Below, one piece after another: positions 843 through 61,757 of a stretch of DNA of 64,000 nt. Every line of letters begins with the position of its first letter. The stretch's first letter is position 1. The DNA is from Bigelowiella natans CCMP2755 (taxonomy: Eukaryota > Protista > Cercozoa): contig ADNK01002131.1 in assembly GCA_000320545.1 (NCBI GenBank), positions 58,219-122,218 on the forward strand, given 5' to 3'. Position numbers and translations under genes: made by a program. The notes under the pieces were generated by a model. It was not told the DNA's origin. It did no database searches and saw only the letters and a program-made list of their open reading frames with translations.

Positions 843-1875
843 GAAAATAATAATGTCAAACCGAATGCAACGATGGTGGCAGCGGTAACAGTGATGACAC
901 AAAGGGAAGACAAGGTAGAAGAGACGGCCGGGAACATGGCGAACAATGAACCTCACAAAATGTCCCCACTCGATAAAAGAGAAATGAATGAACATGAGGT
1001 CAATTTTAACCATAATCAACAGGAATGTCTAGATAGCACTTTCTCCTTTGTTTCACATTTTTCGCCCAGACAAGCTTCATCGAGATACATCATCATTGCT
1101 GGGTCATCATGTGCAACAGCGCAAATTGAATCATGTCACCAACATGTGAGCGATGCGCAGTACCATCTCCTGCGGAATGGCTTCAAAGCTGGACATGGCT
1201 TGGACATCAAAACATTTCGATCCTGTTTGCTCTTCCAGCAAATCTTGGTTCTTCAGCAAGTCTTGCTAGTTGGTTCGATCGATTCTTCACAAAAAACTTT
1301 CCATCCAGCTGAGCTGACACAATTTGGGTGCTCGTTTCAGGGCAACGGTTTGGTCTTTCCAGCACTGCAGCAAGTGTGGACTGTGGACACAGTGTGCATC
1401 ACATGTGTGTCATGTGCATCACACATGCGCATGTCTGTTGTCATGCACACCCTTCAAAGCATTCAAATGGGCGTCTCTGTGCTGCACGATTTGCTCCGCA
1501 TCACTCCCGTTGCATGGACATGGTCACGCAGAACTGTTCATCACAGAGCATGACACTTTCACATGTGACATTTGTCTGTGCATGGCTTCATGGTGTCACA
1601 TCAATGCCTCAGTCCAATGACACCCATCGCTTGCATTTCATGCACACTGAACGTGTGTGCTTGGCAAGGCCCTGCATGACCCTGCGTGGGCATGTGGTTG
1701 TTGCACATGCCATCAATGTCAGGCATGCATGTGTTCTTGAAGCATTTGACATCTGTGTTGTTGCTGTCAGCATCACCTAGTTGAAGCCGCATTGTCGCAC
1801 ACTGCTCCCTCTGTGCAAACAATGCCATTCCACTCACTCAGACTCCTCCACGGCCTCAAATCACATCGATTGCAC

Positions 1876-2115
1876 TGCCTCCCTTCACGAATTGTGTTCC
1901 TGCAGGCTCAACGATCGTGCTGCCTCCCTTCATGAATTGCATTCCTGCAGGCTTGTCGATTCTGCTGCCTCCCTTTGTTTCATCGTGAAGAGAACAGGGA
2001 GCTGTGATTGCAACAGAAGCCAGGAAGCATCGCAGAACTGCACCGGATGATTCATTGTGAAGAGAACAAGGAGCTGTGATTGCAACAGAAGCCAGGAAGC
2101 ACGAGGAAACTGCAC
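1876..2115. repeat. Tandem repeats: 45-bp unit x2 (1876-1965) and 72-bp unit x2 (1979-2115)
   Basis: tgcctcccttcaYgaattg..ttcctgcaggct.. at 1876 and 1921; ttcatYgtgaagagaaca..gagctgtgattgcaacagaagccaggaagca at 1979 and 2051. Confidence 0.9.
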
Positions 2116-2917
2116 CTGCAGTTGCATTGCGCAGCGCTGACAACACAACTGTGCAATTGTTGGAGGGCTGGGTGCGGTGCGATGTGCGCGCAGTGAGCAA
2201 AAGCTAGCAAACGAGCAGGTGGCGGTGTTCAGGTTGAACTGTGAGGTCATCATGCGAGGGTTGACCGCCCTCTGACAAGTGTCAAGCTTGTCATCAGTCA
2301 CATGCAATTGCATTGGGTTTCTGGGCCGCGACAAGGCTAGCAAGTTCAAGAACTTTGTGCAACTGAAGCCAATCAACGTGAGCGACTTGTTCAAACCCGA
2401 ACAAAAAAGGTTCATCAGTGGAACGTGCGAGTTCAAGGTCGATTCAAAGGCACGATTGAAGTGCAGTGACAAAAGAAACCGAGAGTGCAAATCTGACGGA
2501 AATGAAACTTGCAAATTGACGCGCATGTCCATTGGCTTCCCCTTGCTTCAGTGGGCGATCAAACAGTGCCATCTGCATTGTCACAGACATGTGATGCCAT
2601 GTGTGCACCACACGTGATGTTGCTGTGTCCATCACAAGTGCAAGCCCTTTTTTGGCCCCGAGCAACAGTCCTTCTTCACCTCACATGCCCCAAATGTGCC
2701 TTCTCCATGTCACAAGTTGTCATTTCTGTGTCTTTTGTTGTGCATGCAGCAACTGGCAGCGATGCGCAAATGCAATGCAAACTTGATGAAGCGCTTCATT
2801 TCAAACACCTTGCAAAAGACATGGCTTTTCATTTCAGCATTGTGTGTGCAGATTGCAAGCCTACGATGCATGCGCATTCTCAAAGGGACACTTGTTTCAT
2901 GCACACCGTGTCTCGCG

Positions 2918-3487
2918 TCATTTGAATTTCATGATGCAATGTGCACAGAGGTTGATGTCAAGCGTGATGAGGACAAATTGTTCAGAATTTGCATCTGCAC
3001 TTTCAGTTTGCCATCTGTCATCAAAAACTCTCCCAAGATCCATGGCCTTCTCTTTTGTCATGATTTCTTTTGTCGCAAAGAGACAAACCATGGTCTCATG
3101 TCCATTGTCCTCATCATCGTGTTCAAAACATGGTTCGCATGTCTTTTTTTTGAATCTCCGTGATTGAGCTTCAGATGAAGATTTGTGAGTCTGGGCATGA
3201 TGCAAATGCTTCTCGAGTTCATCAGGTAGCACATGCTTGATCTCTTCTTCTTTGGTGGTGTTTTCAGTTGATCCAGATCCTTTCAGCACAGGCCTCACCG
3301 GCGCTTGTGTACGAAGCCTTTTGCGACGGACCTCTTCTGCAAATTGGTCAATGGTTTTGTTCTCTTCCTCGTCCTCACTGTCACTGTCATCACTGCTCGC
3401 AAGGTCGATCACAGTTTTTTCTTCAATTTTCCACGGCGGGCAAACGTCTGGAACTTGGCAGGCTTTTCTTTTCCTGGACATTGGCAT
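2918..3487 (-). pseudogene. Tyr-free acidic/basic ORF relic inside block 1, family unknown
   Basis: 189-aa ORF with NLS-like (RKRK, RRKRLR) and acidic tracts, no Tyr, ending in TGA. It lies in TA-erased DNA, so its length may be inflated by lost stop codons. Confidence 0.3.
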
Positions 3488-3611
3488 GTTTTAGAGGTTG
3501 GTTGGGCAGGTGAGGGGTTTGAGTTGTGAGGACTTTGGTTGAAGAGGAAGTGAGGGGCCGAGCCTTGGATTTCAACAGAACAAACCACGTGGCCTTTGAC
3601 CAGTGTTCTCA

Positions 3612-3765
3612 ATGTGCCACGTGGTGGACCCCGGCAAAGCCATGTGGTGCACTCACCTGGACTTCTCAATGAGCCACGTGGCTGACCCAGGAAATGCCAT
3701 GTGGTACACTCACTTTGACTTCTCTGTGAGCCACGTGGCTGACCCAGGAAAAGCCATGTAGACAC
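3612..3765. repeat. 57-bp tandem repeat, about 3 units
   Basis: gccacgtggYKgacccMggMaaWgccatgtggtRcactcac repeated with period 57. Confidence 0.9.
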
Positions 3766-4469
3766 GTCAAAAATGAGCCCAATGCAAAGCCACGTGGCCT
3801 GCATCAGGAGCGACATTGGATGGAAGCACGCTGATGATTTCTTGACTACACTGAGTGACGCAGCGACGCGCGATTGATGCCAAACCATTGAATGTTGCGC
3901 CAAGACAATGCAGCGTCATTCAAAGCTGTGCTGCGCAGCGCTGCGCTGCAATGTGGCATGTGCTTGCCATGGGCATGAAGTGCAAAAGAAAATGAGCGTG
4001 ATGAACAGCACAACGTTTTGCGCAAACCCAACATTTTTCAGTCCATTTGTTTGCAAATTGTCAATTCGAACTCCCGTTACAGGCCATCCCGTCAACCCAG
4101 AGTCACCATCAACTTCGAGCATTTTTCTCAAACGAATCTGTCTCTTTGTTTGCAACTGTTCCCGCCGTTTTTTCTCTGCTGCGTCTTCTTGAGGGGGGGG
4201 AGGGAGGGGGGCATCCTCATCTTCCTCTTTTCCCTCCTTGTCTTCACCCCCTTCTTCCTCCTCATCATCCTCTTTTTCTTCCTCCATGTCTTGAGGGGGG
4301 GGAGGGAGGGGGGCCTCCTCATCATCCTCTTTTTCTGACAATGCAGAACATCCGTTTAATTAGCGGACACTTGTTATAGACACGTAATACCACATATGTA
4401 CTGTACATGATATTACTATGTCCATCATTGTATGCAACTTGACTCTTGTATTCATGTATCCCTTTTCCC

Positions 4470-7515: not shown

Positions 7516-8176
7516 AACTAGCAAGAAACGATGCTAGTTTTTGCTGTCGCATTCTGTAGAACAAGGAGAATTTAGGTAGGACGACAACCCAATCTGGGGA
7601 TGATGTCTAAGAAACAACACATGCATGTGTGTAGTTCCTAATGTAGTTCCCAATGCACATGGTTTCGTTCTTAATGTAGTTGGATGCGGGGTGGGCGAAA
7701 CTGCCGAATGTGAACAGCATCAAGATGCTAGTTTTTGCTGTCGCATTCTGCAGAATGAGGAGAATTTAGGTGGAGATCTTGGACCAACAAATTTGACAAC
7801 AAAAGACAATTCTTTCAAAGCGACATTGAAAAAAATGCATGATTTCACGATGTTGGCTCAAAATGGCCCTTGCTTCCATTGAAAGTACCAATTTCACACA
7901 CTGTTTGTCGCAACTAAAGATTTCCATGTGTCAAAAGCAATTTCATGTGAAACAGTTTGGTTTCAATTCACATGAATGGAAATGGTTGGTTTTTGATTCA
8001 CATGAATGCAAGAAGTTTTGCTTCTCATGGACAGATTTGCAGCGAGCGAGTCTCTCGAGTTGCACCCTGTCAAGAGTAGCTCCTCCCCCTCCCTTCCCCC
8101 CCCGCCTTCCGCCTACCTCTGTCACTATCCCTGCGAACCCACACTCTTGGTTGCTAGACTTCCCTGTCGGTGCGTG

Positions 8177-10496
8177 ATGTCTCATGCTGACCCTGACGAA
8201 ACAGTTGTGGCCTCACCGGAGTCGCACGAGTTGGGACATTCCGGACCTGCCGAACTCTCAACCGTCACCTCCCAAGAGTCAGGAACCCCCGGACTTCGCA
8301 AACACTTCGATCTCAACGATGCACCTGGACCTCTAGCCGCCCTCCACCTCAGGGAAGGTGTTGACGATGCCCCTCCTGATGTTTCGACACGCATGATTTC
8401 ATCGTGGACCGATGACATTTCAGCTGGCCAGGTCATCGGTTTGCATCACGGAACACAATGGTGCGTGGGGAAAGTCATGTCAGTCAACCAGGATGCGGGG
8501 AATGCGGAATTTGACTGGGCCGATTGCAGGTCATCCTCGGATCACACGGGCGTGAGTGACTGTGGTGACAGTCCTGCTTTTGAACATCTTCCGATGTCCT
8601 CAGCTGTTGATGGCGGTGAAGACAAAGCCAAGATTGCTTTCCACTCGCCCCGGGGGAAATCTGCATGGGATGGCATTCCCATGGCCACACGAGAAGATCC
8701 TGGAGGTCTGAAACGAAAAATTTCAGAGCAAATCAGGCCACTGATGACAACTCGCACCGCAGAACCAGAAAGGAAGTTGGCGACCCCAACTGCTGCAAGT
8801 GTCGCCTCGGCTGAAACCATTCTTCGGAGCAACTGGATTCTCAGCAACGCGCTCACCGACCATCCCAACTCTGGAGAGGGCAACGAGGTGGACACCGAAA
8901 TTGCAGATGCAATCAAGGGTGAAATTCGTGATGTCGACAGTGCTTCACCCAGCCTTCACAAACTGCACGCCCGGAGGCCTCACATCGAGAGAATGTTGAA
9001 AGCCTTGCACCTCCCACACTGCATGAGCCCCACCGGTGAGGCCAAGGATGACTCAGAAACGCCAATGGAAGCAAACTCCGCCCCTTCCAGGTGCCCAGTT
9101 GCCATGGACTCAAAGGAATTCATGGGGATGGAGTCAGAAAGGCGATGGCTACGCATGTTGGATTGTGTCTCAGCGGTTTGTGAAAAAAATGCACGGCTCA
9201 CTGAAGCGCTAGCATCAATGAAGGCCAAGATCAACAGCCAAGCGGAGGAAATTGAAGTGTCACAGCAAGATTGCACCCGCAGGAGAAACCACCGGAGACT
9301 TGGGGAAGCTCCTCCTTCGGTTGCTGCCCCCTCCTCAGAGATTCCACTCATTTCCAAGCTGAACAATGGCAAGGGGAGATTCCGCCCCATGCGTGCCAAC
9401 CCTCCAGGGAATGGAGACTGCTTGAAAGTGATCCTCATGCTTGGGAAACAAGCCCTCACCGAGAGAGCTGATGGTCACATCGCCTGGAATCAGGAGGGGG
9501 GACTTCTGCGATGAGCTGCAGCAGGAACTTCTCAAATGGTGCGAGGAGTCGAGCGAAGAGGTGAAAGAAACGGTGGAATGCACGGAGCATCAAACCTTCA
9601 AAGCTTGGGCACAGTGCTTGGTTGAACTGCGCCAACACTTTGGGGACAGTGAGATCCTGCTCTTCTCAAAAATTGCCAACATTGAGTGCATGGTGATGAC
9701 AAAAACGGGCGCGCGTGCACGTGCACACCGAGGGGACAGGCCGTGCGCACGCCTGTGCTTCTTCTGCGAAACAAATGCCGACGGCGAAGGGAAGATCACG
9801 GGCCACCACCAACCACTCTTTGTCAAACGTGGCCGCTCGGCTGAACTTCTGTTCAACCCGAAAGACCCTCAACTTGAGCTGGTGGAGCAGGCAGCACAGC
9901 CAAAATCTGAGGACCAGCTCTCAGATGAGTTCTGTGCAGCAGACAAAGATGCACGGAGGATCATCCGGGGTCGTCTCTCACAAATCAGGAAGAACCCAGG
10001 TGTTGCACCTCAATGCATGCCCCCCTTCCCTCAGAAAGAGACAGAAGGTTCCTCAAAGGCTGGTCACAATTCAAGCCCGAAGAAGAAGAAGAAAAAAACG
10101 AAGAAGATGACGAAGCAGCATTGGTCCCACAGCCCCCCGCACGCTGCGCACGCTGCTTCTGCTCACATCCGCTCAGAACCTGCCATGGCACGTGCAATGA
10201 CCGTCCCTTCTTCATCAGTCCGCAGGGCGCTCGTCATCTTCACCAACGGCACTGCAGCACAAACTGAGAAGAAACTCGATGAAAGTGTTCCAGCGCTGTC
10301 CAAACACATTGCGACCTTCACTCGAATGAAGAACAAACTGAACGATGGCCACCGCATCATCGTTGTGGCCAATGACGATGCTGGATTGCGGGCGCTTCAT
10401 GACAGTGTCTCGGAGATCGCCAACATGGGGATGAAAGTTGCCAAGTGGCTCCCCGTGGGGAAGCGTCACGGCGGGGGGTCCTGCAACAAAGAGTGA
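8177..10496 (+). pseudogene. ORF1-like relic of a non-LTR retrotransposon with an OTU-like cysteine protease domain; frameshift near the G-run at about 9496-9501
   Basis: PPGNGDCL (OTU Cys loop) at the end of ORF 8006-9514 continues in the next frame with FGDSEILLFSK (WGGxxEL-like) and ITGHHQPL (GHY-like His motif). The C-terminal RALVIFTNG...GHRIIVVAN segment may be RRM-like (inference). Confidence 0.6.
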
Positions 10497-10552
10497 CGGT
10501 GAAGAAACGGCGTGGGAGGCGGGCCATTCTTTCCCTCCTTCGCCAACCACGC

Positions 10553-11338
10553 ATGCACCCCAACCCCTTTTTCAAAGTTGCATGGTGGAACGTCAGAGGC
10601 CTCAATGGCAAAGTGGCTCTTTCTCACAAACTCACTTTGGACGAGAAATTGGATGTTCTTTTTTTGGTGGACACCCAATTCCCTTTGAACAAAACAGCAG
10701 CACCAAAAACCCACCAATGGACCCCATTCCCCACTGCCTTTTCCGGCCCGCACGACTCCAAGCGCGGGATGGGAATGCTCCACAAATCAAAAGCCTCCAT
10801 TGTCCAGGCAGGCCTTCACGATGTCTGGATTGCAGCAGAGGCATCAACACCGATCCTCCTGCATGCTGCTCACTGGCCATGTGCGGGAGACCCTCTGCAC
10901 GACCAAGCACGCAACGAATTCACGGTTTCGGCTCGCGCCGTGATGCCCCACCACAAGTCAGTTCTGTCGGCAGGAGATTTCAACGCTCGTCTCTCCTCCG
11001 ACAGGGACACAACAACCAATCCCCAGGGTTCCAAGGTGCTGGAGGCTGCCTCTGCCCTGGGCCTTCTTCACTGGGATGTGGACCTCAATGTTTTGTGCGG
11101 CCCGTGCTCCAGAGAAGTGGAACTTGAATCGCCGACTGGCACCATCATGCAGCGGTCCACGCCAGATCACGGCTTCTGCAACGAAGCTGCTGCACTCATC
11201 ACATCAGACACCCACGTTTCCCCACACAACTGCCTCAGCGACCACCGCCCCTTGGTGGCTTCCCCAGCTGTGACAGCCTCCCCCAACCTCCATCTCGTTT
11301 CGGGGTCGTGGGACAACACCATCAAAATTTGGCGATGA
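10553..11338 (+). mobile_element. 5' part of LINE-like ORF2: apurinic-type endonuclease (EEP/APE) domain, truncated before any RT domain
   Basis: Canonical APE motifs in order: WNVRGLN, LDVLFLVDT, AAHWP (YxP), AGDFNAR, STPDH (DY), SDHRPL. Directly follows ORF1 as in LINEs. Confidence 0.85.
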
Positions 11339-11858
11339 ATGAATGGGTGGTGTCTTGAGCAGCTGATGCAAGTGGTGAGATGGTGAAAGGAAATGGCAGG
11401 AGGGTGGAGAGGACGGAACGGGATCAGAAGGAAGATGAAAGGAGGAACGGAACAAAGTGCATGGGTGTCGTCATGCAGTGCCATGCAGTTTGGAGATGAG
11501 ATTCGTTGGTCAGCGTCACCTAGCTTGCCAACTAGTTTGGACCGACGAACTGCTTTGATGGGGTCCACCCGCGCGCATGAGGATGGTTGGGGTCAGGGGG
11601 AAAGGGAAAATTCAATCAACAACACTTTGAATCAGAGTCCTCCATCCAACGTTCCTGGAATCACTTGAGAAATGATGGGGACATGGATGGATGGGATGCG
11701 AATTGCCAGCAGCAACAATGACTTTGAGAGTCGCTCTGCGTCACCACAGCTGTTGGTTTCCATCCTGCGTGTGCGTCCACGTGTCGTGCATGCATGTGGT
11801 CATTTCACTGACTTGCAGACAGCACGCAGCGCACGTTCCGCACAATGCAAGCCGCGCA

Positions 11859-12375
11859 GGAATTCCTTGACGGTCAAAGCGGTGCACACGTGTGTTGTTG
11901 ACATGTGCAAAATCTTCGAGATCTCTGAGAGGTTTTGACTTGGATGATGGTGACATCTGACACACGTGTGCCGTTTTGACGGTCAAAGCGGTGTTTTTGA
12001 AAAATTTCAAGATTTTCGATGGCAAGTCTTCTGATGGGAGAAAAAAATGAAGTGCAAAGTGCAAGGTGCAAGGTGCATGTGTGAGAACTGTGTGCATCAT
12101 CATTTTTTTTCAAACGTGAAGTGTGAAAACATGTGCACAATGCAAACATGCATGTGCATGTGTGCACCTTGCACCTTGCACTTTGCACTTCATTTTTTTC
12201 TCCCATCAGAAGACTTGCCCTCGAAAATCTTGAAAACTTTCAAAAACACTGCTTTGACCGTCAAAACGGTGCATGCATGTCAGATGTCACCATCATCCAA
12301 GTCAAAACCTCTCAGAGATCTCGAAGATTTTGCACGTGTCACACGTGTGCATCGCTTTGATCGTCAAGGAATTCC
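11859..12375. mobile_element. Fold-back MITE-like element with about 215-bp terminal inverted repeats and internal direct repeats
   Basis: ggaattccttgacg at 11859 is the reverse complement of cgtcaaggaattcc ending at 12375. Arms are highly similar over about 215 bp. ttgacggtcaaagcggtg occurs twice per arm. Flanked by ca on both sides. Confidence 0.85.
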
Positions 12376-14809
12376 CACGCGAACACGATCCACTTTCCTT
12401 GAACTGGAGATGTGGGGAACATGGAGGATCATTGTGCAAATTGTTCGGATTTCATTGAGTCCAAAGGCTGACGTGGAGGAACATCAGAATGTTTCGACAT
12501 CTTGATCCCGACCACCCGGCGACCAAAAACACGTTGACATTGCACGTTCACAGAGAATGCAATGTCAGAATGATTCAATGATGCCTCATCAAAGAGTGTC
12601 AGTGAGCATCGAGTAGCTGTTGGCTTTGTTTGCATGAAAATGACGGCTGGTAGAAAGTGCGTGCCATTGCGGACAACTGCAATCATTGCGTCGTGTGCGC
12701 CAGAACACGTTTGCGTCATTGTTTGGCTGGATTTGGGGAAATGTGGGATGATTGTTTGCATGGTGAATGACAGAGCAATCCTGACTGTGTGACTGTGGAC
12801 ACAGTGCATGTCATGCACGTGTCATGCACATCACACGTGCGCATGTCCATTGTGTGGCTGACCGTCACCACCTTCGAATTCATGGTGATCGTCGAATTGT
12901 TTCCAAATCATGGTGCCCAAGCAGAATTCTGTTCAATGTCAGAGTCTCTTTCTTGCTGGGACAGCAAGTGATCGATTTCCTCACCACATTGCATCCGACA
13001 CAGTCTGACAACTTCTCCTGATGAGCAGCACGTGGCACACCAATTGGGAGCCGCCCATCACCGCATCATGATTTCTGTCGATGACATGCTTCCGCCCAAA
13101 TCATGGCACATCTAGACATGCTTCTTGGTGGTTCTGGCTTCAACTTTGCGGCCAATTTGAACCCAATCACGATCATTCAATGTTTGAAACAATGCACTCA
13201 TTCTGGGGATGGGAGTTGTGAATTCAATTCATTCAATGGGATGCATCGGAACACTGCTAGACTGGTGACTGCAAAATTTTTCTGGGCTGCATGGAGACAA
13301 GCTAGCAAGTTGCGACGATTTCAGGGGCTGCTGTCTTCTGTTGCAATTGCTTCCCACCACCAATGAGACTCAGAGTGCTTCTTCTCAGAAGCAATCGCAA
13401 CGTCATGAGGAAAGATGCTTTGCAAGATGTGCCACGAAAACCACAACGAAAAACTGGAAGTTCAAGTGCAAGCACGGGAACAATTGGCGTCAGTGTTCCA
13501 AGAAATATCATCGAGTTTGAGGCAAGAAACGAAGCCAAATTGTGGACAGAAAGTCCAATTCAAGAGTCACCGCTGCATCCAAGATTCCAAACAGAAGGAA
13601 ATGGGGGAGAAGACAAGACGACACGCAAATTGTTTCTTTCAATTTGGACCTCCGCAACGATGGCCATTGCGGCCATTTTCAACTTTGGGCATCTAGCACA
13701 CTTCCAATTCCAGGATCCAGACCGATCTCATGCAGACCAAGCTGGCAAGCCCAGTTTCGACAATCGCGAGGAGAGCACCAAGCTAGCAAGGAAGCCCAGA
13801 ACGTTTTGCCAATGTTGTTTCTCTTTTGGGTGCTGTCTCAGCTGGCGGTGCCTGCATGACCTTGTGCACAACACCGGCTTCAAATGCAGCACGCGCATTC
13901 ATGCTCAATCAATGTTGTTGCTGCTGCAATTTTCAAAACACTCCACTAGCTAGCTAGCTTCATCGAAGAACTTGATTTTGGAGAAAGACAAACAGTGCGG
14001 TCATTCAGTTGTCATTTGACATGAATCAGCTCAAAAGCAAGTTTCCAAAGCTAGAAAGGCAAGAACTGAAAAAGACCAAAGCATGATTGCCAGATTGGCC
14101 AACGTCAAAATTGTCAAAATTGCAAAAGGGTGCCTCCAGACCTTGCTCCTCACTGCTAGCTAGCTAGACTGTGGCGCTACTAGGCTAGCATGTGACACCA
14201 TTGTTGCAATTGCAGTGCTTGCGTTTGCCAGTTTGGTGTGTAGTCTCTCGCTTGCTGCAATGAGAAATCTCCATTTTTGTTCATTTGACAATTGATTTTT
14301 CAAATGAAAATGTCTAGACTAGATCTGCTGTTTGTCAATCATCCAAAAGTGTGTTTCGCGTTCAATTTGGAAATCATCACATGCAACAGCTAGATCTAGA
14401 GATGTAGCGAAAAGGTTAGACTCACATTGCACACGCACCCAGCTAGCCAGCGAAACAAACGCGAGCGACAATGCTAGATTGCAAACTGAAAATGACACAA
14501 AATTTATCAATTGGTACCAAATTAATTGTGCTTGATTGGAAGTATCTCAAACAAATTCGAGTAGCTGCCCTCGCGTGCACAAGTTCCACATTTCGTACGC
14601 GACACGTGTGATTAACTCATGCTAAACTAGTAATATTTGATTCAGAGTGTTGCTGAATTGCTGCAAATATCATCTCTAAATGTAAAAGTAAGCACAATGA
14701 GCGTTTTGGATGTAATACTTCCCAGGTTTTACGGATTTCAGTGAACTATTTGAAAAATCTATACCACCGATCACAGTACCAGAGTACCACCAATGTTTCT
14801 CATAGAAGA

Positions 14810-17125: not shown

Positions 17126-17289
17126 GTTCTCCTTCTTCTTCTTCTCCTTCGTAGTGTGGTCCAAGGACCGCGCAGTTTGGAAGAAATGAACAATGAACAA
17201 TGAACAATGAACAATGAAATGATATCAGGGCAAAAAGAACAACAAATCGCCTGCAAAATACTTGAGTAAAGCGGTGCTGCTACTTCCGC

Positions 17290-18670
17290 TTCAGGGTAAC
17301 TTGGGTTGTCGTAGAGGGTAAATACAAGTGTTACTTCCAAAGAAATTGAGGGATCCTTCTCCCGCAACTAATTTCCTTTTTGGAATGTCGCACAAAGCAT
17401 TCCCCACCGGTGAGTCTTGTTTGTCAGCAAGATGTCGCACAAAACGATTCTCCGCTTGTTTGTTGTGCTGCTTCCATTTGCCAACGGATACGAGCATAGG
17501 CGCAAGACCGTTTGAAGGATTTATAGGAAAGAGTGTCTTGCAGTTATTAGGTACGACACAATAAATTGTCACAATCTGGAATGGAATTGGCATTTGGACA
17601 AAATTACACATCCTCAACGATCCTTTCTTTTACACACAACTCGAAACTATCTGCCTGCACTGATGCCACGACGAATTATCAAACGAACTGATCGACGAAA
17701 TCGTCCATCGAATGCGCCCTGGGACCGGCCAGCTACTCCTCCGAGAGGAAAGGTGACGGTCGCCATTTCATCACTTACATGTCCAGCAGTTGGATCATTA
17801 TGAGCTGCTATCTCAGGCGCATCTGAAGAAGGGTTCAAAAGTAGTTACACCTCCATGGAAAGTCCGATCAGTTTCCACTATTCCGACGAGAAGAATCAAG
17901 AATGATCACCCCTCTAGTCCACCGTGGGCTACTGACCTTCATTTATCTTCTTCACGTCTTGTCCCTTTAAACAAAACATTTGGGTATTGCCATCTATCTC
18001 CATTTTTCTAGACCGTCTTCTTGATGGATAGAACATCTCATCTTATCAGGGGACGAAGAGGAAGCTGCATGACTAAATTTTCGACAAATAATGTACAATC
18101 TATAGGGATAATGTACCTTTTTTAGGGAATAAACAATCTTCTGTTGATGTGACGAATTGCAATTTTGGATTTTAGAATCAGCCAAGATCTCCTTTGGTAG
18201 TCCTGGGAAGCAAACTAAATCAAAGGAAAAAGATGTACTCTACCACGGTTGATTTGAAAGTTTACATAGCATAAATTCGCATAATAGTACACTAAAATTG
18301 TCTGTGACCTCATTTTTTAGACTGGAAAGTCCAACTCCAACTTTCTTTCTTCACGACCAGTAACAATTTTAAGATCTGGAAGACAGATATTCTTATTAAA
18401 TTAGTGATTTTGCATATTGCAGATATACGATGATGTATTACCAAGTCGCAAGAAAATAGTTTTGCTGCAGAATATTGTGAGTCTTGCTGTAGTAAAATTT
18501 CACGCCTATCTAATATATTTATATTTTTCTTCAAACTAGCACAAAGGTGAAGAAATAGTTCACAAACCTGGAAAGAAAATTGTCCCGGAAATGAAGTGCA
18601 GCAAACCATCTGTTCCACGTGCACAAGGAAAAAAAAAGGTTTTGTATAATGTGTAGCACCTTTCAAGCTT
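17290..18670 (-). CDS. Possible multi-exon gene of unknown function
   Basis: Several minus-strand open frames with plausible composition (17291-17617, 17647-17838, 18310-18666). No motif recognised and structure not resolved. Confidence 0.25.
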
Positions 18671-19399
18671 TCGCAACCTCCTTGAATCCCTTCAGTATCA
18701 TTATTAGTATCCTATTGTAACTTTTGCTGGATCATTTCTTTGATTTAAATATTAAAAAGATCCCTACTCCAAAGTCAAGCTCTATGCAACAATGGTCACA
18801 AAAAAACAATCGAATTATAAACTGGAGACCTCTGAATGTTAGGTATGAAAGAATTTTCCATAAAATGATTCAACATTATGTGAATACATGCTAATTTACA
18901 GACGTCGTAGAGAACTACAAGCTATTTCAAAACAAACGGTTAGTATTTTTGAGTAATGACATCCCATTTATTTGTCATTTTAGAACAAATACCATTTATA
19001 GGTTGACGTTCGCAAACAGAATAGAGAAAACATTGGTCCACTAACAAAAGTTGTGGGAGCAAGAACTCAAAAGATAGTTACTTCAAGCAAAAAGTGCACC
19101 TACTACAGTAGTCGGAACATTAGCAATGTGACGTTTGGCTAAACAATTAGCATGCAGCTTCAGAATTTTGATGTATTCTCATCATGTCGTCATTGGACGC
19201 AAAACGTGCAGATTTGTTACATTTTGCAAATTTAAAGTATTGAACGAACAATCGTAAAGTAAAACCAAACCTGACACCTCATTTCATGCGGATCGATCAT
19301 TTGCATCTTTAAATTCCATCTAAAAACCTTGACATCGGGCCTGGGATTGATGAGATAGATTACATGCAAACATCGATCAAGTGTGATGCATGTATTGCT

Positions 19400-20570
19400 A
19401 GATTGTCATGCTAGTATGGCACTGGCCACAACTTTATGCCAGCATGCGGTGCAGCTAGCTAGACAGATGACCAACACTAGCAACAATGCAACAAAATGTT
19501 TTTGTTGCTTTGCAGCACAGCTAGCTAGCTAGAGTGGTTTGTTGGTTATAACTGGACAACTCTAAAACTCTAGAACTAGACAATCTAGCTAGCTAGCAAT
19601 GCTAGAATGACGACATCCAGAACCAGAGAACACTGCTAGACTGTAACATCAAACGAACATTGAACTTCGATAGTTCGTCTAGTCGTGTTGTGGCAAAACT
19701 GAACCATCAATTATATCAAGCTATGCTAGCTAGCCAGTCTAGCAGTGTGCTACAATGCTGGCTAGCTAGTATGCTGCAATGCAGGCTAGCTAGCTCTGAG
19801 CTAGCATGACTAGAGCATGCCAGCATGAATGCAGCGCGTGCGCAAAACCCGAATGGAAACCCAGCTAGCCAGCTAGCCAGCGCTAGCAGCGTTTGCGTGC
19901 AGCAGCTCCCACCAACAACTCACTAGCTAGCTAGCATTCATTAACATTCCAGAACTGGACAAATCCTGAATGAATGATGAGCCGGACAAACTAGCAAAGC
20001 ATCATGCTCATCACTGGAAAGTGGGAACAAGCTCTAGAGCTAGCAAGCTAGCAAGTGAGCAGAAAAAAGCTAGCTAGCGCTGGCCAGCAAACGATCCGTT
20101 GGTGGTGCTTGTCATGGAAGTCTAGAAGTGCCCACAGCTGGACAGTGCTAGAGTGTTGGTCACTCTCCGCGGCGCTTCATCAAACTCAAAGTGGTGCGTT
20201 TGTTGCCAAGAAGAGGGAAAATTGGACACTTTTGGACCACATTGAACATTGAACATTGAAGCAAACATTGAACATTCTAGCATCGACTAGATTGAAATGA
20301 GCATTGATGCAAAACAACGTGCAAGAACCACAGTTGGACACAGTCACCTTGGAAACACACGTGCTGGCATGCTGGCATGCCACGTTCAATCGTCCGATTT
20401 GCATCTCTAAATCTGGTCACCTCTAGACCTCCAAATCTTGCTAATGATCTCTGCACGATGTTGACCAGCAAGTTTGCAGGCACGCAGGAATCCTTTCTGG
20501 ATCCATCGATGCCCTTTGAACTGAACATTGCCCCTGCTCCATTGAGCAGTGCCAGAGTGGGCGACCGAGT
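19400..20570. other. TpA-depleted, CTAG-enriched block 3
   Basis: In 19790-20570 about 20 TA lie in CTAG and only about 4 in other contexts (by eye). No recognisable coding sequence. Confidence 0.8.
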
Positions 20571-20793
20571 AGAGTGGTAATTCATCGGTACAACAAAAGT
20601 TCTACCTGCCAACATGTGAAATCGATTTTCTTACGACAATATGAATTTGCCAGATCACTATCATGCGAAAAACATCGTAAAATAACCGTTAATAATATGC
20701 TTTGTCGCAGCTAAAAAGCGGAACCCGGAAGCCATCCCCTGCCACGTCCTCCTTTGGGCTCGGCCCCTTCAATCTCATCCTAGGAGGCGCTCT

Positions 20794-22542
20794 ATGGCGG
20801 AAATGCAGGAAATGGACGCATCCAGTGCATCTACTCCTCGATCTCGTGCGATGGTGCTCTTGCCAGCATATATCACCGTCTTTGTTGACTTCCTGGGATA
20901 CAGTGCGACGGTACCCCTCTTCTCGTATCCTGTAGCAAATTGTTCCTTCGATGATTAATACGCTCTATTCCCAGGTCGTCGTCCTGCCCTATATTTCTAT
21001 GGAACAGAATGCAACTGCCTTCGAAGTCATGTGCGCCACGGTACTCATCTCTCACACGCTTGTCGACGCAGGATGTGACAGCGTGGCTATATCTGGTATT
21101 TCAGAGCGGGGTCTTCTATGCGGGTCAAATGGCAGGTAGCTTTGTGATGGGGTATGTGTCCGATCATATTGGACGAAGACCTGTCGTACTGGCTTCCTTA
21201 CTCGGGTGTAGTATATCGTATATCTGGTGCATTTACGCGCAGGTCATTCAGCACAGAAAAGAGAACAGTCACGAATTGACACGAAAAATACCGCCAATGA
21301 ATGAATAAACAATGAATAAAAAAGGATGCCTTAGCAGGGGAATCGATTTGTCGGAGTTAGAGAAGGAGGAAGAAGTAATAGACGATAATGAAGTAAAAAG
21401 TGACCAAAAAGCTGTTTCCTTTCTCCCTCGAATAGGATGTCTATATGCTAATGCTGGCTCGACTGTTCGGCGGAATAATGGGCGGTACCTTACCGGTGGT
21501 GCAGGCAATGGTGCTTGACATCGTCACGGTAATAAAAGTGATGATAATAATAATAATAATGTTAATACTAATAACAATAGGCAGAAGAAGAAGAAGAAGA
21601 AGAAGAAGAAGAAGAAGAAGCGGAGAAGTGACACAATAAAGCAGATGCAGCCGATCACACTGGGACAAACATGAATATTTCTTTTGCTGAGCAAATATGC
21701 GTGCAGGACCCAGAGGAGCGAGCTGGTTGCCTCAGTCGCGTCAATGCGTCCTTTGGAATGGCATTCGCGGTATGAATTTCTAGCAGTGCTTTAATTTTTA
21801 TTTCTCCACGTGGGAGAAAGCAGCAGCAGCAATCTTTTACATTATGACACCGATGACGACGATGACCGTAATTCGGTTCGTTGGAAGGATCGATGATACG
21901 TCCAACAAAACACAGCTTCTTCCACCATCTTTCACCCCTCTCACTCCGTCCTTTCCGTTGGTCAGGTAGGCCCAGCGCTTGGTGCAGGCGTGAACGAGCT
22001 CTTCGGGAAGAAGGCTGTTTTCGTTGTGGTGGCCGTACTCGGTTGCATTTGCTCTGCATTTGCGGGGTACATGCTGGAGGAGACCCTCGACGTCTCGCTC
22101 CCAGGAAACGCCTCGAGGAGGATAGGGAGGGGCACTGCAGCATCACTGCAAAGAACCGTGTGGCTAGCATCCGCTGCCATGCTAATGACCGGTACAGCAC
22201 ATCGCGTGCGGACGTCTTGAAGGATTTGGCTTTGATTCTCTTCATCCTTCTTATTTACACAATGTATTAGCGTACGCGTTCTCTGCATTGACGTCCGCCC
22301 TGCCCCTGTTCTACGTGCCTATGTACCATTGGGGACCGCGAGAGTTGGGGATGGTGGCGACTGGGTTCGGACTCAGCATGGCCTTTTACAACATAATGGT
22401 TACGAAGCCGATCATAAAACTCTTTGGAGCGCCACGAGCCAGTGAGTTAGTAGTAGCATAGGAGGGGGTGTACAAGCTTGAATTAGACTTTAGGAGTTGA
22501 GTTCTTGCAGTAAATTAACATGAGAGAGTGGGAGGGATGAAG

Positions 22543-22627
<85 letters not shown>

Positions 22628-25797: not shown

Positions 25798-25841
<44 letters not shown>

Positions 25842-34297: not shown

Positions 34298-34681
34298 TCA
34301 CCTGAACTTTCGTCTCAGGTCGTGATGTTTACGACTTGTCTGGGCTCCTGTTCTTGTGCGATAAGACTTTCTAGGTCTTCTTGCCGAGACGGGTTTTGCA
34401 GATCTACTCGTGTTCAAAGGCTCACGTGGTCCAATGAGCTGATCTATTAGTTTTGTGATACGGTTCGCCTCTTCAATGTAAACTTGCGATTGTATCTGTG
34501 AGAAATTCGGATTCAGAGAGGTGATAAAAATGTGGACATAGTTACATACCTGCACTTCTCTTATCCTCGTGTACTTTGTATTGGTAGTCACTTCGTGCAG
34601 ATCCTCTTCAGCTTTTCTAATTTGCTCTTCTAAACTCCCTATCCTTTCATTCAAGCTGAAGAGTTTATTTAAAATTCCCAA
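34298..34681 (-). CDS. 3' exons of an IQCE-like coiled-coil protein (54-nt intron 34496-34549)
   Basis: Spliced LEEQIRKAEEDLHEVTTNTKYTRIREVQIQSQVYIEEANRI resembles the IQCE coiled-coil pattern K.T...E.......YYEE..RL. GT-AG intron is in frame. Upstream exons not resolved. Confidence 0.5.
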   Translation of the reverse strand: MGILNKLFSLNERIGSLEEQIRKAEEDLHEVTTNTKYTRIREVQVCNYVHIFITSLNPNFSQIQSQVYIEEANRITKLIDQLIGPREPLNTSRSAKPVSARRPRKSYRTRTGAQTSRKHHDLRRKFR

Positions 34682-42047: not shown

Positions 42048-43039
42048 CACTAGGGATATGGTGAGGGGGGTGAGATGTCATGGGCATCTCAGTAGCTCAA
42101 AAGCTCCTGGGCTGGGGCCCTTCACGAAACAAGGAGCTACAAAACTTATAAGACCAAAGTTGCACTGGAGAATACGTGTAGCAGGCCAGTAGCGTATTTA
42201 AGTAAATGTGCAGCACTTTCTAAAATAAAAAACCTGCATGTGTGTGTATACGTCTTAACATATGGAAAGTGCAAAGCCGTACAAAATGTGCTCGACCTAG
42301 CTGCAGTTTGTGTATGATCTAGTGATAGTCTCTGCATATCGCTTGCAATACATGTAATGCATTCGGTATCATTGTGCGTCTATGTGGCATATTACCATAG
42401 CCAAATAATCCAACAGCTAGTTGTGTGAGTGTGGCTCGTTTCACCGAACATGTTGCTCGATCATGATCGCTGCCGGCGGACTTAGCATTACCTAGATCAC
42501 ATATATTCATTGTTTCCCTAATCTGTTGTGTGGGCGACACGTCTAGACGTACATCTAGATATATGAGACGGATGTAATGAAATGTTTAGATTTTTAGATG
42601 TATACATGTGTGTGTAATATGAGACGGATGTAATGAAATGTTTAGATTTTTAGATGTATACATGTGTGTGTAATGTATACATCGTACATGCAGCAGACAC
42701 AACTTAAAAACAAACAGACACAACAAGCTAGCTTAAGCGCTGTAGCCGCTGCTCTGCATAGCTACGTTGGGATGACCATTGAAAATTTTAAACATCTAAT
42801 TACTACTTCCGTCTCATGCATCGTATATGCACATGCTACACATGCGCTGCGTTATTGCTGGGATATATATACCTAGATGCAAACGTATATATTACATATA
42901 TTATATATGTCATATGTGCTGTGTCTATAGTAGATACGCGTACTGCTACCACGTACGACAGCGATATATACATGCTGCGGCATCATGCCTAGCTAGCTAG
43001 CATACAGGTAAGACTTCTGCACGCCGCCGTATGTACACA

Positions 43040-43080
<41 letters not shown>

Positions 43081-47613: not shown

Positions 47614-48934
47614 ATGCAGAGTCCAGGAACTACAGCCGATGCTTTGGCTGAACTTGGAATTTTCGTAAGCAAAGTGAAGAAGGAAAAAAAGGAAAAAAAG
47701 ATTGAAACAAAAGAGGAACTTTATAGTAAGATGAAAACATTGGAGAGGAAGATAGAGTTCCTTGACATCCAGGAGGAATACATTAAGGATGAGCAGAAAA
47801 ATTTGAAACGCGAACTTATCCGTGCGAAGGAAGAGGTGAAAAGAATACAGTCCGTCCCTCTTGTAATCGGTCAATTCTTGGAGATGATCGATCAGGATAC
47901 GGGAATTGTATCTTCCACCACTGGCCATACCTACTATGTACGAATTCTCAGCACCCTGAATCGTGAGCTTCTAAAGCCGAACTCCTCCATAGCGCTACAC
48001 AAATACTCCAACTCTGTGGTGGACATTCTACCTCCAGAGGCAGATTCAAGCATTTCGATGATGCAGATGCAAAAAAAACCAGACATTAAGTACTCAGATA
48101 TTGGTGGTCTGGACATCCAAAAACAAGAAATCAAAGAGGCGGTTGAATTGCCGCTCACGCACTTCGAATTGTATAGACAAATTGGAATTGACCCACCTCG
48201 AGGTGTTTTGATGTATGGCCCCCCGGGAACAGGCAAAACCATGATGGCCAAAGCAGTCGCAAATCATACGACTGCAGCATTTATTCGCGTTGTTGGATCT
48301 GAGTTTGTCCAGAAATATCTTGGCGAGGGGCCTCGCATGGTTCGAGACATGTTCAGACTTGCAAAAGAAAATGCTCCTGCGATCGTATTCATCGACGAGA
48401 TTGACGCAATTGCGACAAAGCGTTTTGATGCACAAACTGGAGCAGATCGAGAAGTCCAGCGCATCCTTCTAGAGCTGCTGAACCAAATGGACGGTTTTGA
48501 CCAATCTGTCAATGTCAAGGTAATCATGGCTACCAATAGGGCAGACACATTAGATCCTGCTCTCCTTCGACCCGGGCGCCTGGATAGAAAAATTGAATTC
48601 CCGCACCCAGACAGGAGGCAGAAACGGCTAATTTTCCAAGTGTGTACTGCAAAGATGAATCTCAGTGATGATATTGATCTTGAGGACTATGTTCAACGTC
48701 CCGAGAAACTCAGTGCTGCTGATGTTGCTGCTATTTGTCAAGAGGCGGGGTTGCATGCCGTGCGGAATAATAGATATGTTATTCTCAATAAAGATTTGGA
48801 GAAAGCTTACAAATCAAACGCCAAGGTATTATCTCGCAAAATATTTAATTCTTTTTCCTAATTCGATCGTCGACTGATGTTAATTTTTTGTTCTTTTTCA
48901 GAAAGCGGAGCAAGAATTCGAATTCTACACATAG
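47614..48934 (+). CDS. RPT3: 26S proteasome AAA-ATPase subunit Rpt3 / regulatory subunit 6B (exons 47614-48825, 48902-48934)
   Basis: [56 protein letters not shown]. One 76-nt GT-AG intron gives the conserved ending [10 protein letters not shown]-stop. Confidence 0.97.
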
Positions 48935-50156
48935 AACTGGAACACAATATTGTGTAATTGTGTTACAAAGTATGCAAACACATTTATTGAAATTTATCAA
49001 AAAAATAGAACAAATATCATCACAACAATAAGTTCGGCAAAAAATCGGCATTGATCGAATAAACACAATGGCTAGGTGTATTCCCTGTCTCACCTTCTAC
49101 GCTCGTACTACTATGTTAAGATTGTAAGCGTGATACTACACACACGCGCGCGGTTTGCAAACAATGGTGAAATTATAGTGATCGATACTTGCATGCGGTG
49201 TCGATACTTACATGCGGTGTCATTGGTATCCCAGCTAGCCAGCTAGCCAGTATACCAGGCCACCTGCGCGATTGACATTCGATCATTCGATCCTTGCAGC
49301 TTAGACTATAAATCGGCCGAGATAGAATAGTAGATGGTAGCTGAAGCAGGCTAGCAGGGGACTTATCAAACATGTGCATATATATGCGTTCTAGCTAGCT
49401 AGCTATATAGTAGTACGTAGAGTTGTACGTTTCTGTAATTTCTGTACGTAGCTAGCGTAGTGCATCGCAATCGCCCTCGCACATAGCGCATACTGTCTAG
49501 CTAGCTAGCTGTGCAGCATCAGCTAGTTCAGGTGACACATGCTATACTGTCTCGCATCGTACCACCGTGTGCCACATCACGTGTGTGGCGAATGTGCGGT
49601 GCGTCAGCTATGTAGAGTTGCTGCATGATCATCTTCGCTTCTGCAGGGCATGATGCATCATATACTATGTGGATTTGTTTCCTACAAAAGGTTACAATTC
49701 GATTTGAATTGTGTTTATTAAATTTTCGAAACAAGCTTGTACATCATTAATCTAATATGTACAGCCATTTCGATTCATATAGCATAGCATATAGCTATGC
49801 TGATCTGTCTGTTCAATACTTTCATTATTCTTGCAATATATATACTCTAGTTTTGGGTTATCAGTCTCTTGTAAGTTTGTATTATTTATTATAATGTTAT
49901 GTACGTGAAGTACCGAATTATAGAGTTATGTATAGGAGGCCTGCGAGAGCACCAATTATATTCCTTCGAAGTCGCTCTGCTCAGTTGCAAAAGCAAAAGT
50001 ATCAATATTTTACATGATACATCTCGGATAACTTGACAACTTACTTCAGATATCTCCTTCGAAAAGAGGGAATTGTGTCTAAAGTTTTTCCTGCTTCCTG
50101 AGACAAGTATGATTTTTCTAAAACAACGTCGTTAAACAATATATAAGAAGATCCAT

Positions 50157-61631: not shown

Positions 61632-61722
<91 letters not shown>

Positions 61723-61757
61723 ATATATATATATATATATATCTGCCCTCCTGCTGC

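What the first reader, a model, noticed from the sequence alone, without database searches (positions are those of the whole stretch)
19400..20570. CTAG is the exception and is over-represented: second context rule or mutational sink
Seen: in 19800-20300 about 18 CTAG occur in 500 bp (about 2 expected) while other TA contexts are nearly gone. Runs such as ccagctagccagctagccag mix CCAG and CTAG. Inference: either CTAG is shielded from the TpA mutator, or a second process (C->T at the inner C of CCAG/CCGG, e.g. via cytosine methylation) keeps regenerating CTAG. Either way it is a fingerprint of the enzymes involved.
Basis: partly seen in the sequence, partly recalled or inferred. Interest (0 to 1): 0.82.

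Follow-up and report, generated by a model that had tools for sequence, protein, structure and literature searches.

The report
CTAG scars surviving TpA hypermutation
In this alga (Bigelowiella natans) a recently described mutator erases TA dinucleotides in blocks. CTAG piles up at 19.4-20.6 kb because it mutates about ten times more slowly than other TA sites and because this spacer was already full of small CTAG-containing insertion scars.

Summary
Positions 19800-20300 hold 19 TpA, and 18 of them are CTAG (about 2 expected; at most 6 in 1000 dinucleotide-preserving shuffles).

The window is Bigelowiella natans. TpA->TpG/CpA hypermutation in this alga was already described in a 2026 preprint, which does not mention CTAG or flanking context.

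Two separate causes explain the finding.

1. **CTAG is slowed, not immune.** In transposon-like erased blocks, survival is 59% for CTAG, 13% for other S-TA-S sites and 0.6% for W-flanked TA. A model using only the base 3' of the edited A fits all ten NTAN classes (relative rates T>=A > C 0.47 > G 0.11). CTAG is the only tetramer with a 3' G on both strands. The preprint's 226 de novo mutations also under-hit TAG about two-fold.

2. **The excess is not made by the mutator.** Of 41 CTAG, 34 lie in X4-CTAG-X4 scars (CTAG plus a 4-bp target duplication) or in (CTAG)2-3 arrays. The same structures occur in TA-normal spacers.

Decayed scars (X4-CCAG-X4, X4-CTGG-X4) occur essentially only in erased DNA. 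The direction is therefore CTAG->CCAG/CTGG, not regeneration. First-stage notes on other windows of this genome also record CTAG sparing and the scars.

The parts
19400..20560 (.). Non-coding stretch with TpA erased except in CTAG. It is partly erased at 19400-19800 and almost fully erased at 19801-20560. It holds 41 CTAG: 19 in arrays, 15 in single scars and 7 other.
19860..19880 (.). CCAG-CTAG-CCAG-CTAG-CCAG, two nested scars with X4 = CCAG. An identical 21-mer lies in TA-normal DNA at 49230-49250.
20118..20129 (.). Intact scar AAGT-CTAG-AAGT. Other examples are 20144-20155 (AGTG-CTAG-AGTG), 20419-20430 (ACCT-CTAG-ACCT) and 19987-19998 (CAAA-CTAG-CAAA).
19581..19600 (.). CAAT-(CTAG)3-CAAT, a three-unit CTAG array that itself sits inside a 4-bp duplication. 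The other arrays in the interval are at 19455, 19521, 19726, 19762, 19786, 19923 and 20070.
19816..19827 (.). Decayed scar CATG-CCAG-CATG. Other decayed scars in the interval have cores at 19623 (CCAG), 20138 (CTGG), 20372 (CTGG) and 20552 (CCAG).
13001..14480 (.). Second erased, scar-rich stretch. It holds 20 CTAG among 25 TpA, 8 single scars, two 3-unit arrays and 3 decayed scars (cores at 13742, 14090, 14228).
8130..13000 (.). Transposon-like erased block (endonuclease/exonuclease/phosphatase ORF, foldback) with no scars. With 1185-4211 it was used to measure context-dependent TpA survival.
1185..4211 (.). Erased block with no intact scars and two decayed scars (GAAG-CCAG-GAAG, cores at 2020 and 2092).
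48862..49700 (.). TA-normal spacer downstream of the proteasome Rpt3 gene with the same CTAG arrays and scars (12 CTAG). The cluster starts about 100 bp beyond the mapped transcript end (~49133).
42200..43040 (.). TA-normal spacer with CTAG scars and one (CTAG)3 array (11 CTAG).
11860..12380 (.). Foldback whose two arms differ by CA-versus-TG at four or more sites. This shows independent TA->CA and TA->TG conversion after the arms were copied.

Best explanation
Two independent processes are superimposed here.

(1) The stretch lies in a domain hit by the TpA->TpG/CpA hypermutation of Bigelowiella natans, presumably an adenine deaminase acting on either strand. The conversion rate depends on the base 3' of the edited A, which is the complement of the base 5' of the T on the other strand. 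The order is T and A fast, C about half, G about one tenth. CTAG is the only NTAN tetramer with the worst context (TAG) on both strands, so it decays about 7-10 times more slowly than an average TpA. It is still standing when the other TpA are 93-99% gone.

(2) The high density of CTAG predates and is unrelated to the mutator. B. natans spacers accumulate a stereotyped 8-bp insertion, CTAG plus a direct duplication of the 4 bp at the target (X4-CTAG-X4), with target preference c|MMnK|g. When the target is itself a CTAG, the result is a 3-unit (CTAG)3 array. My best guess for this second process is the excision footprint of an unidentified cut-and-paste element: a 4-bp target duplication plus two nucleotides from each end, CT...AG.

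Shown: the counts, the context hierarchy, the scars and their decayed forms. Inferred: the deaminase preference as the cause of the hierarchy, and the transposon origin of the scars.
For: Organism and known process: the Rpt3 ORF is 100% identical to B. natans MMETSP transcripts, which map at the DNA level. The only homologue found for ORF 8006-9514 is Bigna1|73609, a gene in the preprint's low-TpA list. The preprint shows TpA-only A->G/T->C de novo mutations.

Context rule: in blocks 1185-4211 plus 8130-13000, survival against TA-normal density is CTAG 9/15.2, other S-TA-S 9/68.6 and W-flanked 2/343. Fisher tests give p=1.6e-8, 4e-6 and 0.003. The additive 3'-neighbour model fits all ten classes (deviance 1.45, 6 df) and beats a uniform rate (p=5e-13). 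The fitted kT values are A 3.0, C 1.4, G 0.33, with T unbounded.

Independent support: of the 226 de novo mutations in the preprint's Table S2, 23 have G 3' of the edited A, against about 44 expected (p=2e-4).

Scars: 38 of 193 CTAG have identical 4-mers on both sides, about 50 times chance, and no other non-microsatellite tetramer does this. The target shows A/C at the first base and G/T at the last base in 29/32 cases each. Arrays have 3 units (8 cases) or 2 units (6 cases), never 4 or more. The same features occur in TA-normal spacers.

Direction: flanked CCAG/CTGG cores are 10/95 in erased DNA (control tetramers 1.05%, p=7e-8) against 1/287 in normal DNA.

TA->CA/TG is seen directly between the foldback arms.
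Against: The expected NTAN counts for the erased blocks come from TA-normal DNA of the same window, not from the true ancestors of those sequences.

The numbers are small: 9 CTAG, 2 GTAC and 32 scars.

The availability of trinucleotides in the preprint's viral regions is approximated from this window. With that proxy the de novo under-hitting of TAG (about 0.4-0.5) is weaker than the long-term estimate (about 0.1), and TAC is not under-hit.

Tetramer survival cannot separate a 3'-G effect from a 5'-C effect, or from a CTAG-specific modification added on top.

No donor element with CT...AG ends and a 4-bp duplication was found in the window. None of the 21 de novo indels in the preprint is a CTAG insertion.

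Seven CTAG in the interval are neither scars nor arrays. That is still about three times the background density.
Confidence: 0.7

Rival explanations
1. CTAG is protected by a CTAG-specific DNA modification (for example N6-methyladenine or a cytosine methylation laid down by a CTAG methyltransferase) or by a bound protein, which blocks the deaminase.
For: CTAG survives better than the half-sites alone would predict: 9 observed against about 3 predicted from GTAC and CTAC/GTAG (my hand calculation from the counts). CTAG clusters sit in spacers in both B. natans and Amorphochlora, which could mean they are recognised sites. Erased blocks have a lower CpG ratio (0.31-0.70 against 0.87), a hint of cytosine methylation in these domains.
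Against: Non-CTAG S-TA-S sites are also protected relative to W-flanked sites (13% against 0.6%, p=4e-6), which a CTAG-specific mark does not explain. The joint additive neighbour model fits without any extra CTAG term. De novo data show TAG as a class is under-hit. About 30% of scar CTAG have decayed.
Confidence: 0.15
2. CTAG is continually regenerated from CCAG/CTGG by C->T transitions, so it acts as a mutational sink fed by point mutation.
For: CA and TG are abundant in erased DNA, and the background spectrum of the genome is GC->AT biased (preprint). Some CTAG must therefore arise this way.
Against: Scars in TA-normal DNA have CTAG cores; one flanked CCAG core there is within the control rate. 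Flanked CCAG/CTGG cores are enriched only in erased DNA, which gives the direction CTAG->CCAG/CTGG. Both CCAG and CTGG forms occur (7 and 3), as expected from TA->CA and TA->TG. Point regeneration cannot produce a 20-fold excess, nor the 4-bp flanking duplications. CCAG+CTGG are only about 4% of CA+TG sites by my rough estimate, yet CTAG is 45% of the surviving TpA in the transposon-like blocks.
Confidence: 0.03
3. The excess is ordinary slippage of an (AGCT)n microsatellite, and the surviving CTAG are simply younger than the erasure, with no difference in susceptibility.
For: 19 of the 41 CTAG are in tandem arrays. (CCAGCTAG)n occurs as a plain 8-bp microsatellite in unrelated metagenome contigs.
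Against: Arrays are 3 or 2 units and never longer, whereas tetramer arrays in general run 402 two-unit to 32 three-unit. Fifteen CTAG are single scars with varied flanks. In scar-free transposon-like DNA, CTAG still survives 59% against 0.6-13% for other contexts. Decayed scars show that many scars predate the erasure.
Confidence: 0.05
4. CTAG motifs in spacers are functional (for example termination or boundary elements) and are kept by purifying selection while neutral TpA are erased.
For: CTAG clusters lie just beyond transcript ends and at convergent gene junctions. Two convergent spacers of Amorphochlora amoebiformis also carry them. First-stage notes s1-417313 and s1-417317 report the same elsewhere in the genome.
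Against: Selection cannot explain CTAG survival inside dead transposon-like sequence or the graded half-site effect. The flanks of the scars vary, and 30% of the cores have decayed without replacement. The interval here lies upstream of the MFS transporter gene (plus strand) and beside a minus-strand WH2-motif ORF. It is not shown to be a convergent junction.
Confidence: 0.07

Closest known systems
TpA->TpG/CpA hypermutation of integrated viral and other foreign DNA in Bigelowiella natans (Mettrop et al., bioRxiv 10.64898/2026.01.13.699255)
   Same: Same organism and same signature: TpA lost, CpA and TpG gained, strand-symmetric, regional with sharp edges. A homologue of an ORF in the neighbouring erased block is in that paper's low-TpA gene list.
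   Different: The paper's text treats the target as the dinucleotide only and has no mention of CTAG, trinucleotide or context. Here the rate is shown to depend on the flanking base, with CTAG about ten times slower. This erased stretch is a 1.1-kb non-coding spacer with no viral gene.
Repeat-induced point mutation (RIP) of ascomycete fungi
   Same: Regional, context-dependent transition hypermutation that inactivates repeats and foreign DNA and leaves a dinucleotide signature.
   Different: RIP is C->T, mainly at CpA, and so creates TpA. Here TpA is destroyed. RIP depends on duplication and acts before meiosis, whereas the B. natans process hits single-copy DNA in vegetative lines (preprint).
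Neighbour preferences of polynucleotide adenosine deaminases (ADAR, ADAT2/3, TadA)
   Same: A uridine or thymidine 5' of the edited A is favoured by ADAR and is invariant (U33) for ADAT/TadA substrates. This is established knowledge, not tested here.
   Different: ADARs prefer G 3' of the edited A. Half of the eukaryotic ADAT2/3 tRNA substrates have G35 (anticodons AGN). Here 3' G is the least favoured neighbour. The fingerprint therefore does not simply mirror either enzyme's RNA specificity.
Excision footprints of cut-and-paste transposons (for example Tc1/mariner: target duplication plus terminal nucleotides of the element)
   Same: A constant short palindromic core flanked by a direct duplication of fixed length, a roughly symmetric target preference, and clustering in non-coding DNA.
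   Different: The duplication is a variable 4-mer rather than TA. No donor element was found, and no superfamily with CT...AG ends and a 4-bp duplication could be named from the evidence here.

Membership tests
B. natans TpA-hypermutated region (Mettrop et al. 2026) | Strong TpA depletion (the paper's window cut-off is rho TpA <= 0.43) | tested here: met
   For 19801-20560, rho(TA) is 0.46 with CTAG counted, and 19 of the 22 TpA are CTAG. Only 3 non-CTAG TpA are observed where about 40 are expected. The neighbouring blocks have rho 0.03-0.23.
B. natans TpA-hypermutated region (Mettrop et al. 2026) | Matching gain of CpA and TpG, on both strands | tested here: met
   rho(CA) is 1.42 and rho(TG) 1.72 in 19801-20560, against 1.14 and 1.12 in TA-normal DNA. 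CA-versus-TG discordances between the foldback arms show both products directly.
B. natans TpA-hypermutated region (Mettrop et al. 2026) | Sequence is from Bigelowiella natans | tested here: met
   B. natans MMETSP transcripts map to 47386-49133, and the encoded protein is 100% identical. The homologue found for ORF 8006-9514 is Bigna1|73609.
B. natans TpA-hypermutated region (Mettrop et al. 2026) | Elevated de novo A->G/T->C rate at TpA in mutation-accumulation lines | not testable with these tools
   The scaffold and coordinates of this window in Bigna1 are unknown, and no read data are available.
RIP-type C->T hypermutation | TpA enriched at the expense of CpA/TpG | tested here: not met
   The opposite is seen.
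Tetranucleotide microsatellite formed by slippage | Array lengths fall off steadily and flanks are unrelated | tested here: not met
   There are 8 arrays of 3 units, 6 of 2 units and none of 4 or more. Three arrays lie inside 4-bp duplications. Fifteen single CTAG in the interval carry duplicated flanks.
Cut-and-paste transposon excision footprint | Fixed-length direct duplication around a constant core | tested here: met
   32 X4-(CTAG)n-X4 cases against about 0.75 expected by chance. Among insert/duplication length combinations the signal is specific to a 4-bp duplication plus CTAG.
Cut-and-paste transposon excision footprint | A donor element with matching termini and the same target duplication exists in the genome | tested here: inconclusive
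   None was found in this 64-kb window. The rest of the genome could not be searched.
Cut-and-paste transposon excision footprint | Empty, filled and scarred alleles at the same site | not testable with these tools
   No second B. natans assembly could be reached.

The most novel reading that the evidence does not exclude
The X4-CTAG-X4 scars are not transposon footprints. Instead they are the trace of a host process that repeatedly breaks and repairs DNA at spacers, for example at transcription-termination zones, and inserts a fixed CTAG. CTAG would also be a recognised, modified site, which would be why the TpA deaminase passes it by. In that reading the same motif marks a previously unknown spacer-maintenance system in chlorarachniophytes.
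Probability: 0.1. Interest if true: 0.85.

Novelty: new variant of a known kind. Interest (0 to 1): 0.55.

Why it matters
The B. natans TpA mutator was described only in 2026 and its enzyme is unknown. A flank rule (TAT/TAA > TAC >> TAG, so CTAG is spared) is a concrete biochemical fingerprint. It can be checked at once against the published de novo mutations and used to test candidate deaminases. It also argues that the specificity is not simply that of ADAR (which prefers a 3' G) or of ADAT2/3 on tRNA.

It also matters for methods. Rho(TpA) scans will under-call erased spacers that are rich in CTAG.

Separately, the 8-bp CTAG insertion with a 4-bp duplication is a frequent, stereotyped and so far unexplained mutation in this genome. 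It shapes intergenic DNA and points to an unidentified mobile element or repair pathway.

Tried and rejected
**Polarising with repeat copies.** The only homologue of ORF 8006-9514 (P0121, Bigna1|73609) has no DNA on record, and the window's own ORF is not in the assembly index. No aligned copies could be made.

**Homology between the two scar-rich stretches.** 13.0-14.5 kb and 19.4-20.6 kb share only the CTAG arrays.

**Search for an intact donor element.** I looked for terminal inverted repeats plus a 4-bp duplication, with or without CT...AG ends. Only chance hits and array artefacts turned up.

**Metagenome scan.** The 21-mer of 19860-19880 returned unrelated (CCAGCTAG)n microsatellites, so it is not a chlorarachniophyte-specific element.

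**Rfam.** No match in 12500-21500.

**Pfam.** ORFs of the erased blocks gave only a weak endonuclease/exonuclease/phosphatase hit.

**Excess of CCAG+CTGG in erased blocks.** As a measure of lost CTAG this was too noisy to use.

**Literature.** Searches for CTAG in Bigelowiella or for CTAG footprints with a 4-bp duplication found nothing relevant.

**Amorphochlora locus L001.** It shows no TpA erasure and only one convincing scar. The scars may therefore be specific to Bigelowiella, though 22 kb is a small sample.

Full report
**Observation.** Between 19800 and 20300 there are 19 TpA dinucleotides and 18 of them are CTAG; the exception is TTAA at 19942. Base composition predicts 1.9 CTAG. In 1000 dinucleotide-preserving shuffles the mean was 2.0 and the maximum 6. 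Over the whole interval 19400-20570, 41 of 56 TpA are CTAG. The window has three zones where non-CTAG TpA is almost absent: about 1185-4211, 8130-14480 and 19400-20560. All three show raised CpA and TpG.

**Organism and prior knowledge.** The intronless proteasome Rpt3 ORF (47614-48861) is 100% identical to MMETSP transcripts. The next-best hits are chlorarachniophytes (Chlorarachnion-type and Amorphochlora, 94-96%). Those transcripts map to 47386-49133 of the window. The only homologue of ORF 8006-9514 is jgi|Bigna1|73609. The window is therefore nuclear DNA of Bigelowiella natans.

A 2026 preprint (10.64898/2026.01.13.699255) reports that in mutation-accumulation lines of this alga two integrated viral regions mutate about 1000 times faster than the rest of the genome. 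The mutations are almost exclusively A->G/T->C at TpA. [quoted passage not shown] Bigna1|73609 is in its low-TpA gene list. The 'TpA mutator' is thus already known. The paper's text has no occurrence of CTAG, trinucleotide, tetranucleotide or context.

**Is CTAG shielded?** The cleanest test uses the transposon-like erased blocks 1185-4211 and 8130-13000 (7.9 kb). They contain no intact CTAG insertion scars and cannot be under selection for CTAG. Observed counts against the density in TA-normal DNA of the same window are:

| Context | Observed | Expected | Survival |
|---|---|---|---|
| CTAG | 9 | 15.2 | 59% |
| Other TpA with G/C on both sides (CTAC/GTAG, GTAC) | 9 | 68.6 | 13% |
| TpA with an A/T on at least one side | 2 | 343 | 0.6% |

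Fisher tests give CTAG against all other TpA p=1.6e-8, S-TA-S against W-flanked p=4e-6, and CTAG against other S-TA-S p=0.003.

A model in which each strand is converted at a rate set only by the base 3' of the edited A, with the two strands adding, fits all ten NTAN classes (deviance 1.45 on 6 df). It beats a uniform rate (p=5e-13). The fitted exposure-scaled rates are A 3.0, C 1.4 and G 0.33, with T too large to bound. CTAG is the only tetramer that shows TAG on both strands, so its sparing follows from a trinucleotide preference. Tetramer survival cannot tell a 3'-G effect from a 5'-C effect, because each is the mirror image of the other.

**Independent check with published de novo mutations.** Table S2 of the preprint gives the three bases around each mutation. 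I tallied them by hand and confirmed the tallies with whole-word counts of the file. In the two viral regions the base 3' of the edited A is G in 23 cases, C in 56, T in 76 and A in 71, out of 226. Taking trinucleotide availability from TA-normal DNA of this window (TAG 19.5%), about 44 TAG-type hits are expected (binomial p=2e-4; chi-square over the four classes p=1.4e-4). So 3' G is disfavoured in real time as well.

The effect is weaker there (about 0.4-0.5) than in the long-term estimate (about 0.1), and TAC is not under-hit. The proxy is crude. In addition, the viral region is already half depleted, so resistant contexts are probably more available than assumed, which would make the true TAG rate lower. 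The table does not give the fourth base, so CTAG itself cannot be scored from it.

**Why is CTAG over-represented?** Shielding cannot raise CTAG above its starting density, yet the interval has about 35 CTAG per kb against 1.9 per kb in ordinary DNA. Of the 193 CTAG in the window, 38 have the same four bases on both sides, about 50 times chance. Among all tetramers only dinucleotide microsatellites do the same. Among combinations of duplication length 3-6 and insert length 2-6, the signal is specific to a 4-bp duplication plus CTAG.

There are 32 X4-(CTAG)n-X4 cases with X4 other than CTAG. Examples are AAGT-CTAG-AAGT at 20118-20129, ACTG-CTAG-ACTG, CAAG-CTAG-CAAG and CCAG-CTAG-CCAG. The reconstructed empty site has a roughly symmetric preference c|MMnK|g. 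The first base is A/C in 29 of 32 cases and the last is G/T in 29 of 32 (p=2.6e-6 each).

CTAG arrays have 3 units (8 cases) or 2 units (6 cases) and never more. Tetramer arrays in general run 402 two-unit to 32 three-unit. Three arrays lie inside a 4-bp duplication. Two of the two-unit arrays in erased DNA are three-unit arrays with one unit changed to CCAG or CTGG (19726-19737 and 19758-19769). This is what an 8-bp insertion into a CTAG (1 to 3 units) would give, and it is not what slippage gives.

In the interval, 19 CTAG are in arrays, 15 are single scars and 7 are neither. The same structures occur in spacers where TpA is normal: 42200-43040 and 48862-49700, with 13-14 CTAG per kb overall and more in the cluster cores. 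These include the identical 21-mer CCCAGCTAGCCAGCTAGCCAG at 49230-49250. The CTAG richness is therefore a property of this kind of spacer and not a product of the mutator.

**Direction of CCAG/CTGG versus CTAG.** If scars predate the erasure and CTAG is slowly converted, there should be scars whose core has become CCAG or CTGG, and only in erased DNA. That is what is seen. X4-CCAG-X4 plus X4-CTGG-X4 account for 10 of 95 CCAG+CTGG in erased blocks (control tetramers 1.05%, p=7e-8) and 1 of 287 elsewhere. The cores inside the interval are at 19623, 19820, 20138, 20372 and 20552.

With 21 intact single scars in erased DNA, about 30% of cores have decayed. Other TpA in the same stretches are about 93% gone, which gives a relative rate near 0.1-0.15 and agrees with the transposon-block estimate. 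The foldback at 11860-12380 shows the basic reaction directly. Its arms differ by CA against TG at four or more sites, including inferred ATAC and GTAC ancestors.

**Mechanisms.** For the sparing, the graded half-site effect and the fit of the neighbour model favour an intrinsic preference of the mutator. A CTAG-specific mark is less likely but cannot be excluded as an added layer.

From established knowledge, ADARs prefer a 3' G. ADAT2/3 edits A34 in tRNAs, half of which have G35. TAG avoidance is therefore not the simple imprint of either RNA specificity. That is useful when weighing the preprint's ADAT2 candidate.

For the scars I favour an excision footprint of an unidentified cut-and-paste element: a 4-bp target duplication plus CT and AG from the two ends. 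I hold this at about 35%. No donor element was found in the window, and none of the 21 de novo indels in the preprint is a CTAG insertion.

**Context.** The interval lies between a minus-strand ORF with a WH2 motif (15081-15656) and a plus-strand MFS transporter gene (exon ORF 21009-21308, probable start near 20796). No Rfam family matches. In the relative Amorphochlora amoebiformis (locus L001), two convergent spacers hold CTAG clusters of about 10 per kb. There is no TpA erasure there and only one convincing scar.

**Verdict.** The general system is already described. New here are the flank rule that makes CTAG the slowest target, the demonstration that CCAG/CTGG next to CTAG are decay products, and the finding that the excess comes from a stereotyped 8-bp insertion of unknown origin. 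First-stage notes on other windows of this genome report CTAG sparing (s1-417267, -276, -281, -285, -326) and the scars (s1-417272). I could not test those windows.

Noticed in passing
window 11860-12380: A foldback of about 520 bp (arms about 89% identical) lies inside the erased block. The arm differences include CA-versus-TG pairs (independent TpA conversions) and several CG-versus-CA/TG differences (CpG decay).
   Followed up: partly
window 22552-22600, 25810-25830, 31903-31910, 61690-61738, 63487-63499: Long (TA)n microsatellites are common in TA-normal DNA of this window and absent from the erased blocks. They inflate the TAT/ATA availability used as a proxy.
   Followed up: no
window 1185-4211, 8130-14480, 19400-20560: The CpG observed/expected ratio is lower in the erased blocks (0.31-0.70) than in the rest of the window (0.87). 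This hints at cytosine methylation or silencing of the same domains.
   Followed up: no
not in the window: Table S2 of bioRxiv 10.64898/2026.01.13.699255: Of the 15 de novo insertions in the mutation-accumulation lines, seven end in ACA (GACA, CAACA, ACA...TAACA, ACACA...CAACA...TTACA) and one is TGTG. This looks like another stereotyped small-insertion process in this genome. The paper's text, as far as I read it, does not discuss it.
   Followed up: no
not in the window: same table: Among de novo hits with a G 3' of the edited A, 19 are listed as T>C in CTA and only 4 as A>G in TAG (binomial p=0.003). The other three context pairs are symmetric. Gene orientation or a strand effect is a possible cause.
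   Followed up: no
L001 1-22499 (Amorphochlora amoebiformis, BAAHQB010000011.1): Introns and spacers are extremely TA-rich (up to 352 TpA per kb, GC 12-25%), the opposite of the erased B. natans blocks. CTAG clusters sit in the two convergent spacers 3467-4931 and 12499-14474, mostly as [AT]CTAG[AT].
   Followed up: partly
window 8006-11338: Long ORFs in the erased block include an endonuclease/exonuclease/phosphatase-like domain followed by a WD40-like fragment. ORF 8006-9514 has one homologue, Bigna1|73609 (73% identity), which is listed among the preprint's low-TpA genes.
   Followed up: partly
window 24319 and 24720; 33501-34500: Further CTAG scars (CATG-CTAG-CATG, CACA-CTAG-CACA) and small CTAG clusters lie in TA-normal DNA, apparently between gene ends. 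I did not map the gene models there.
   Followed up: no
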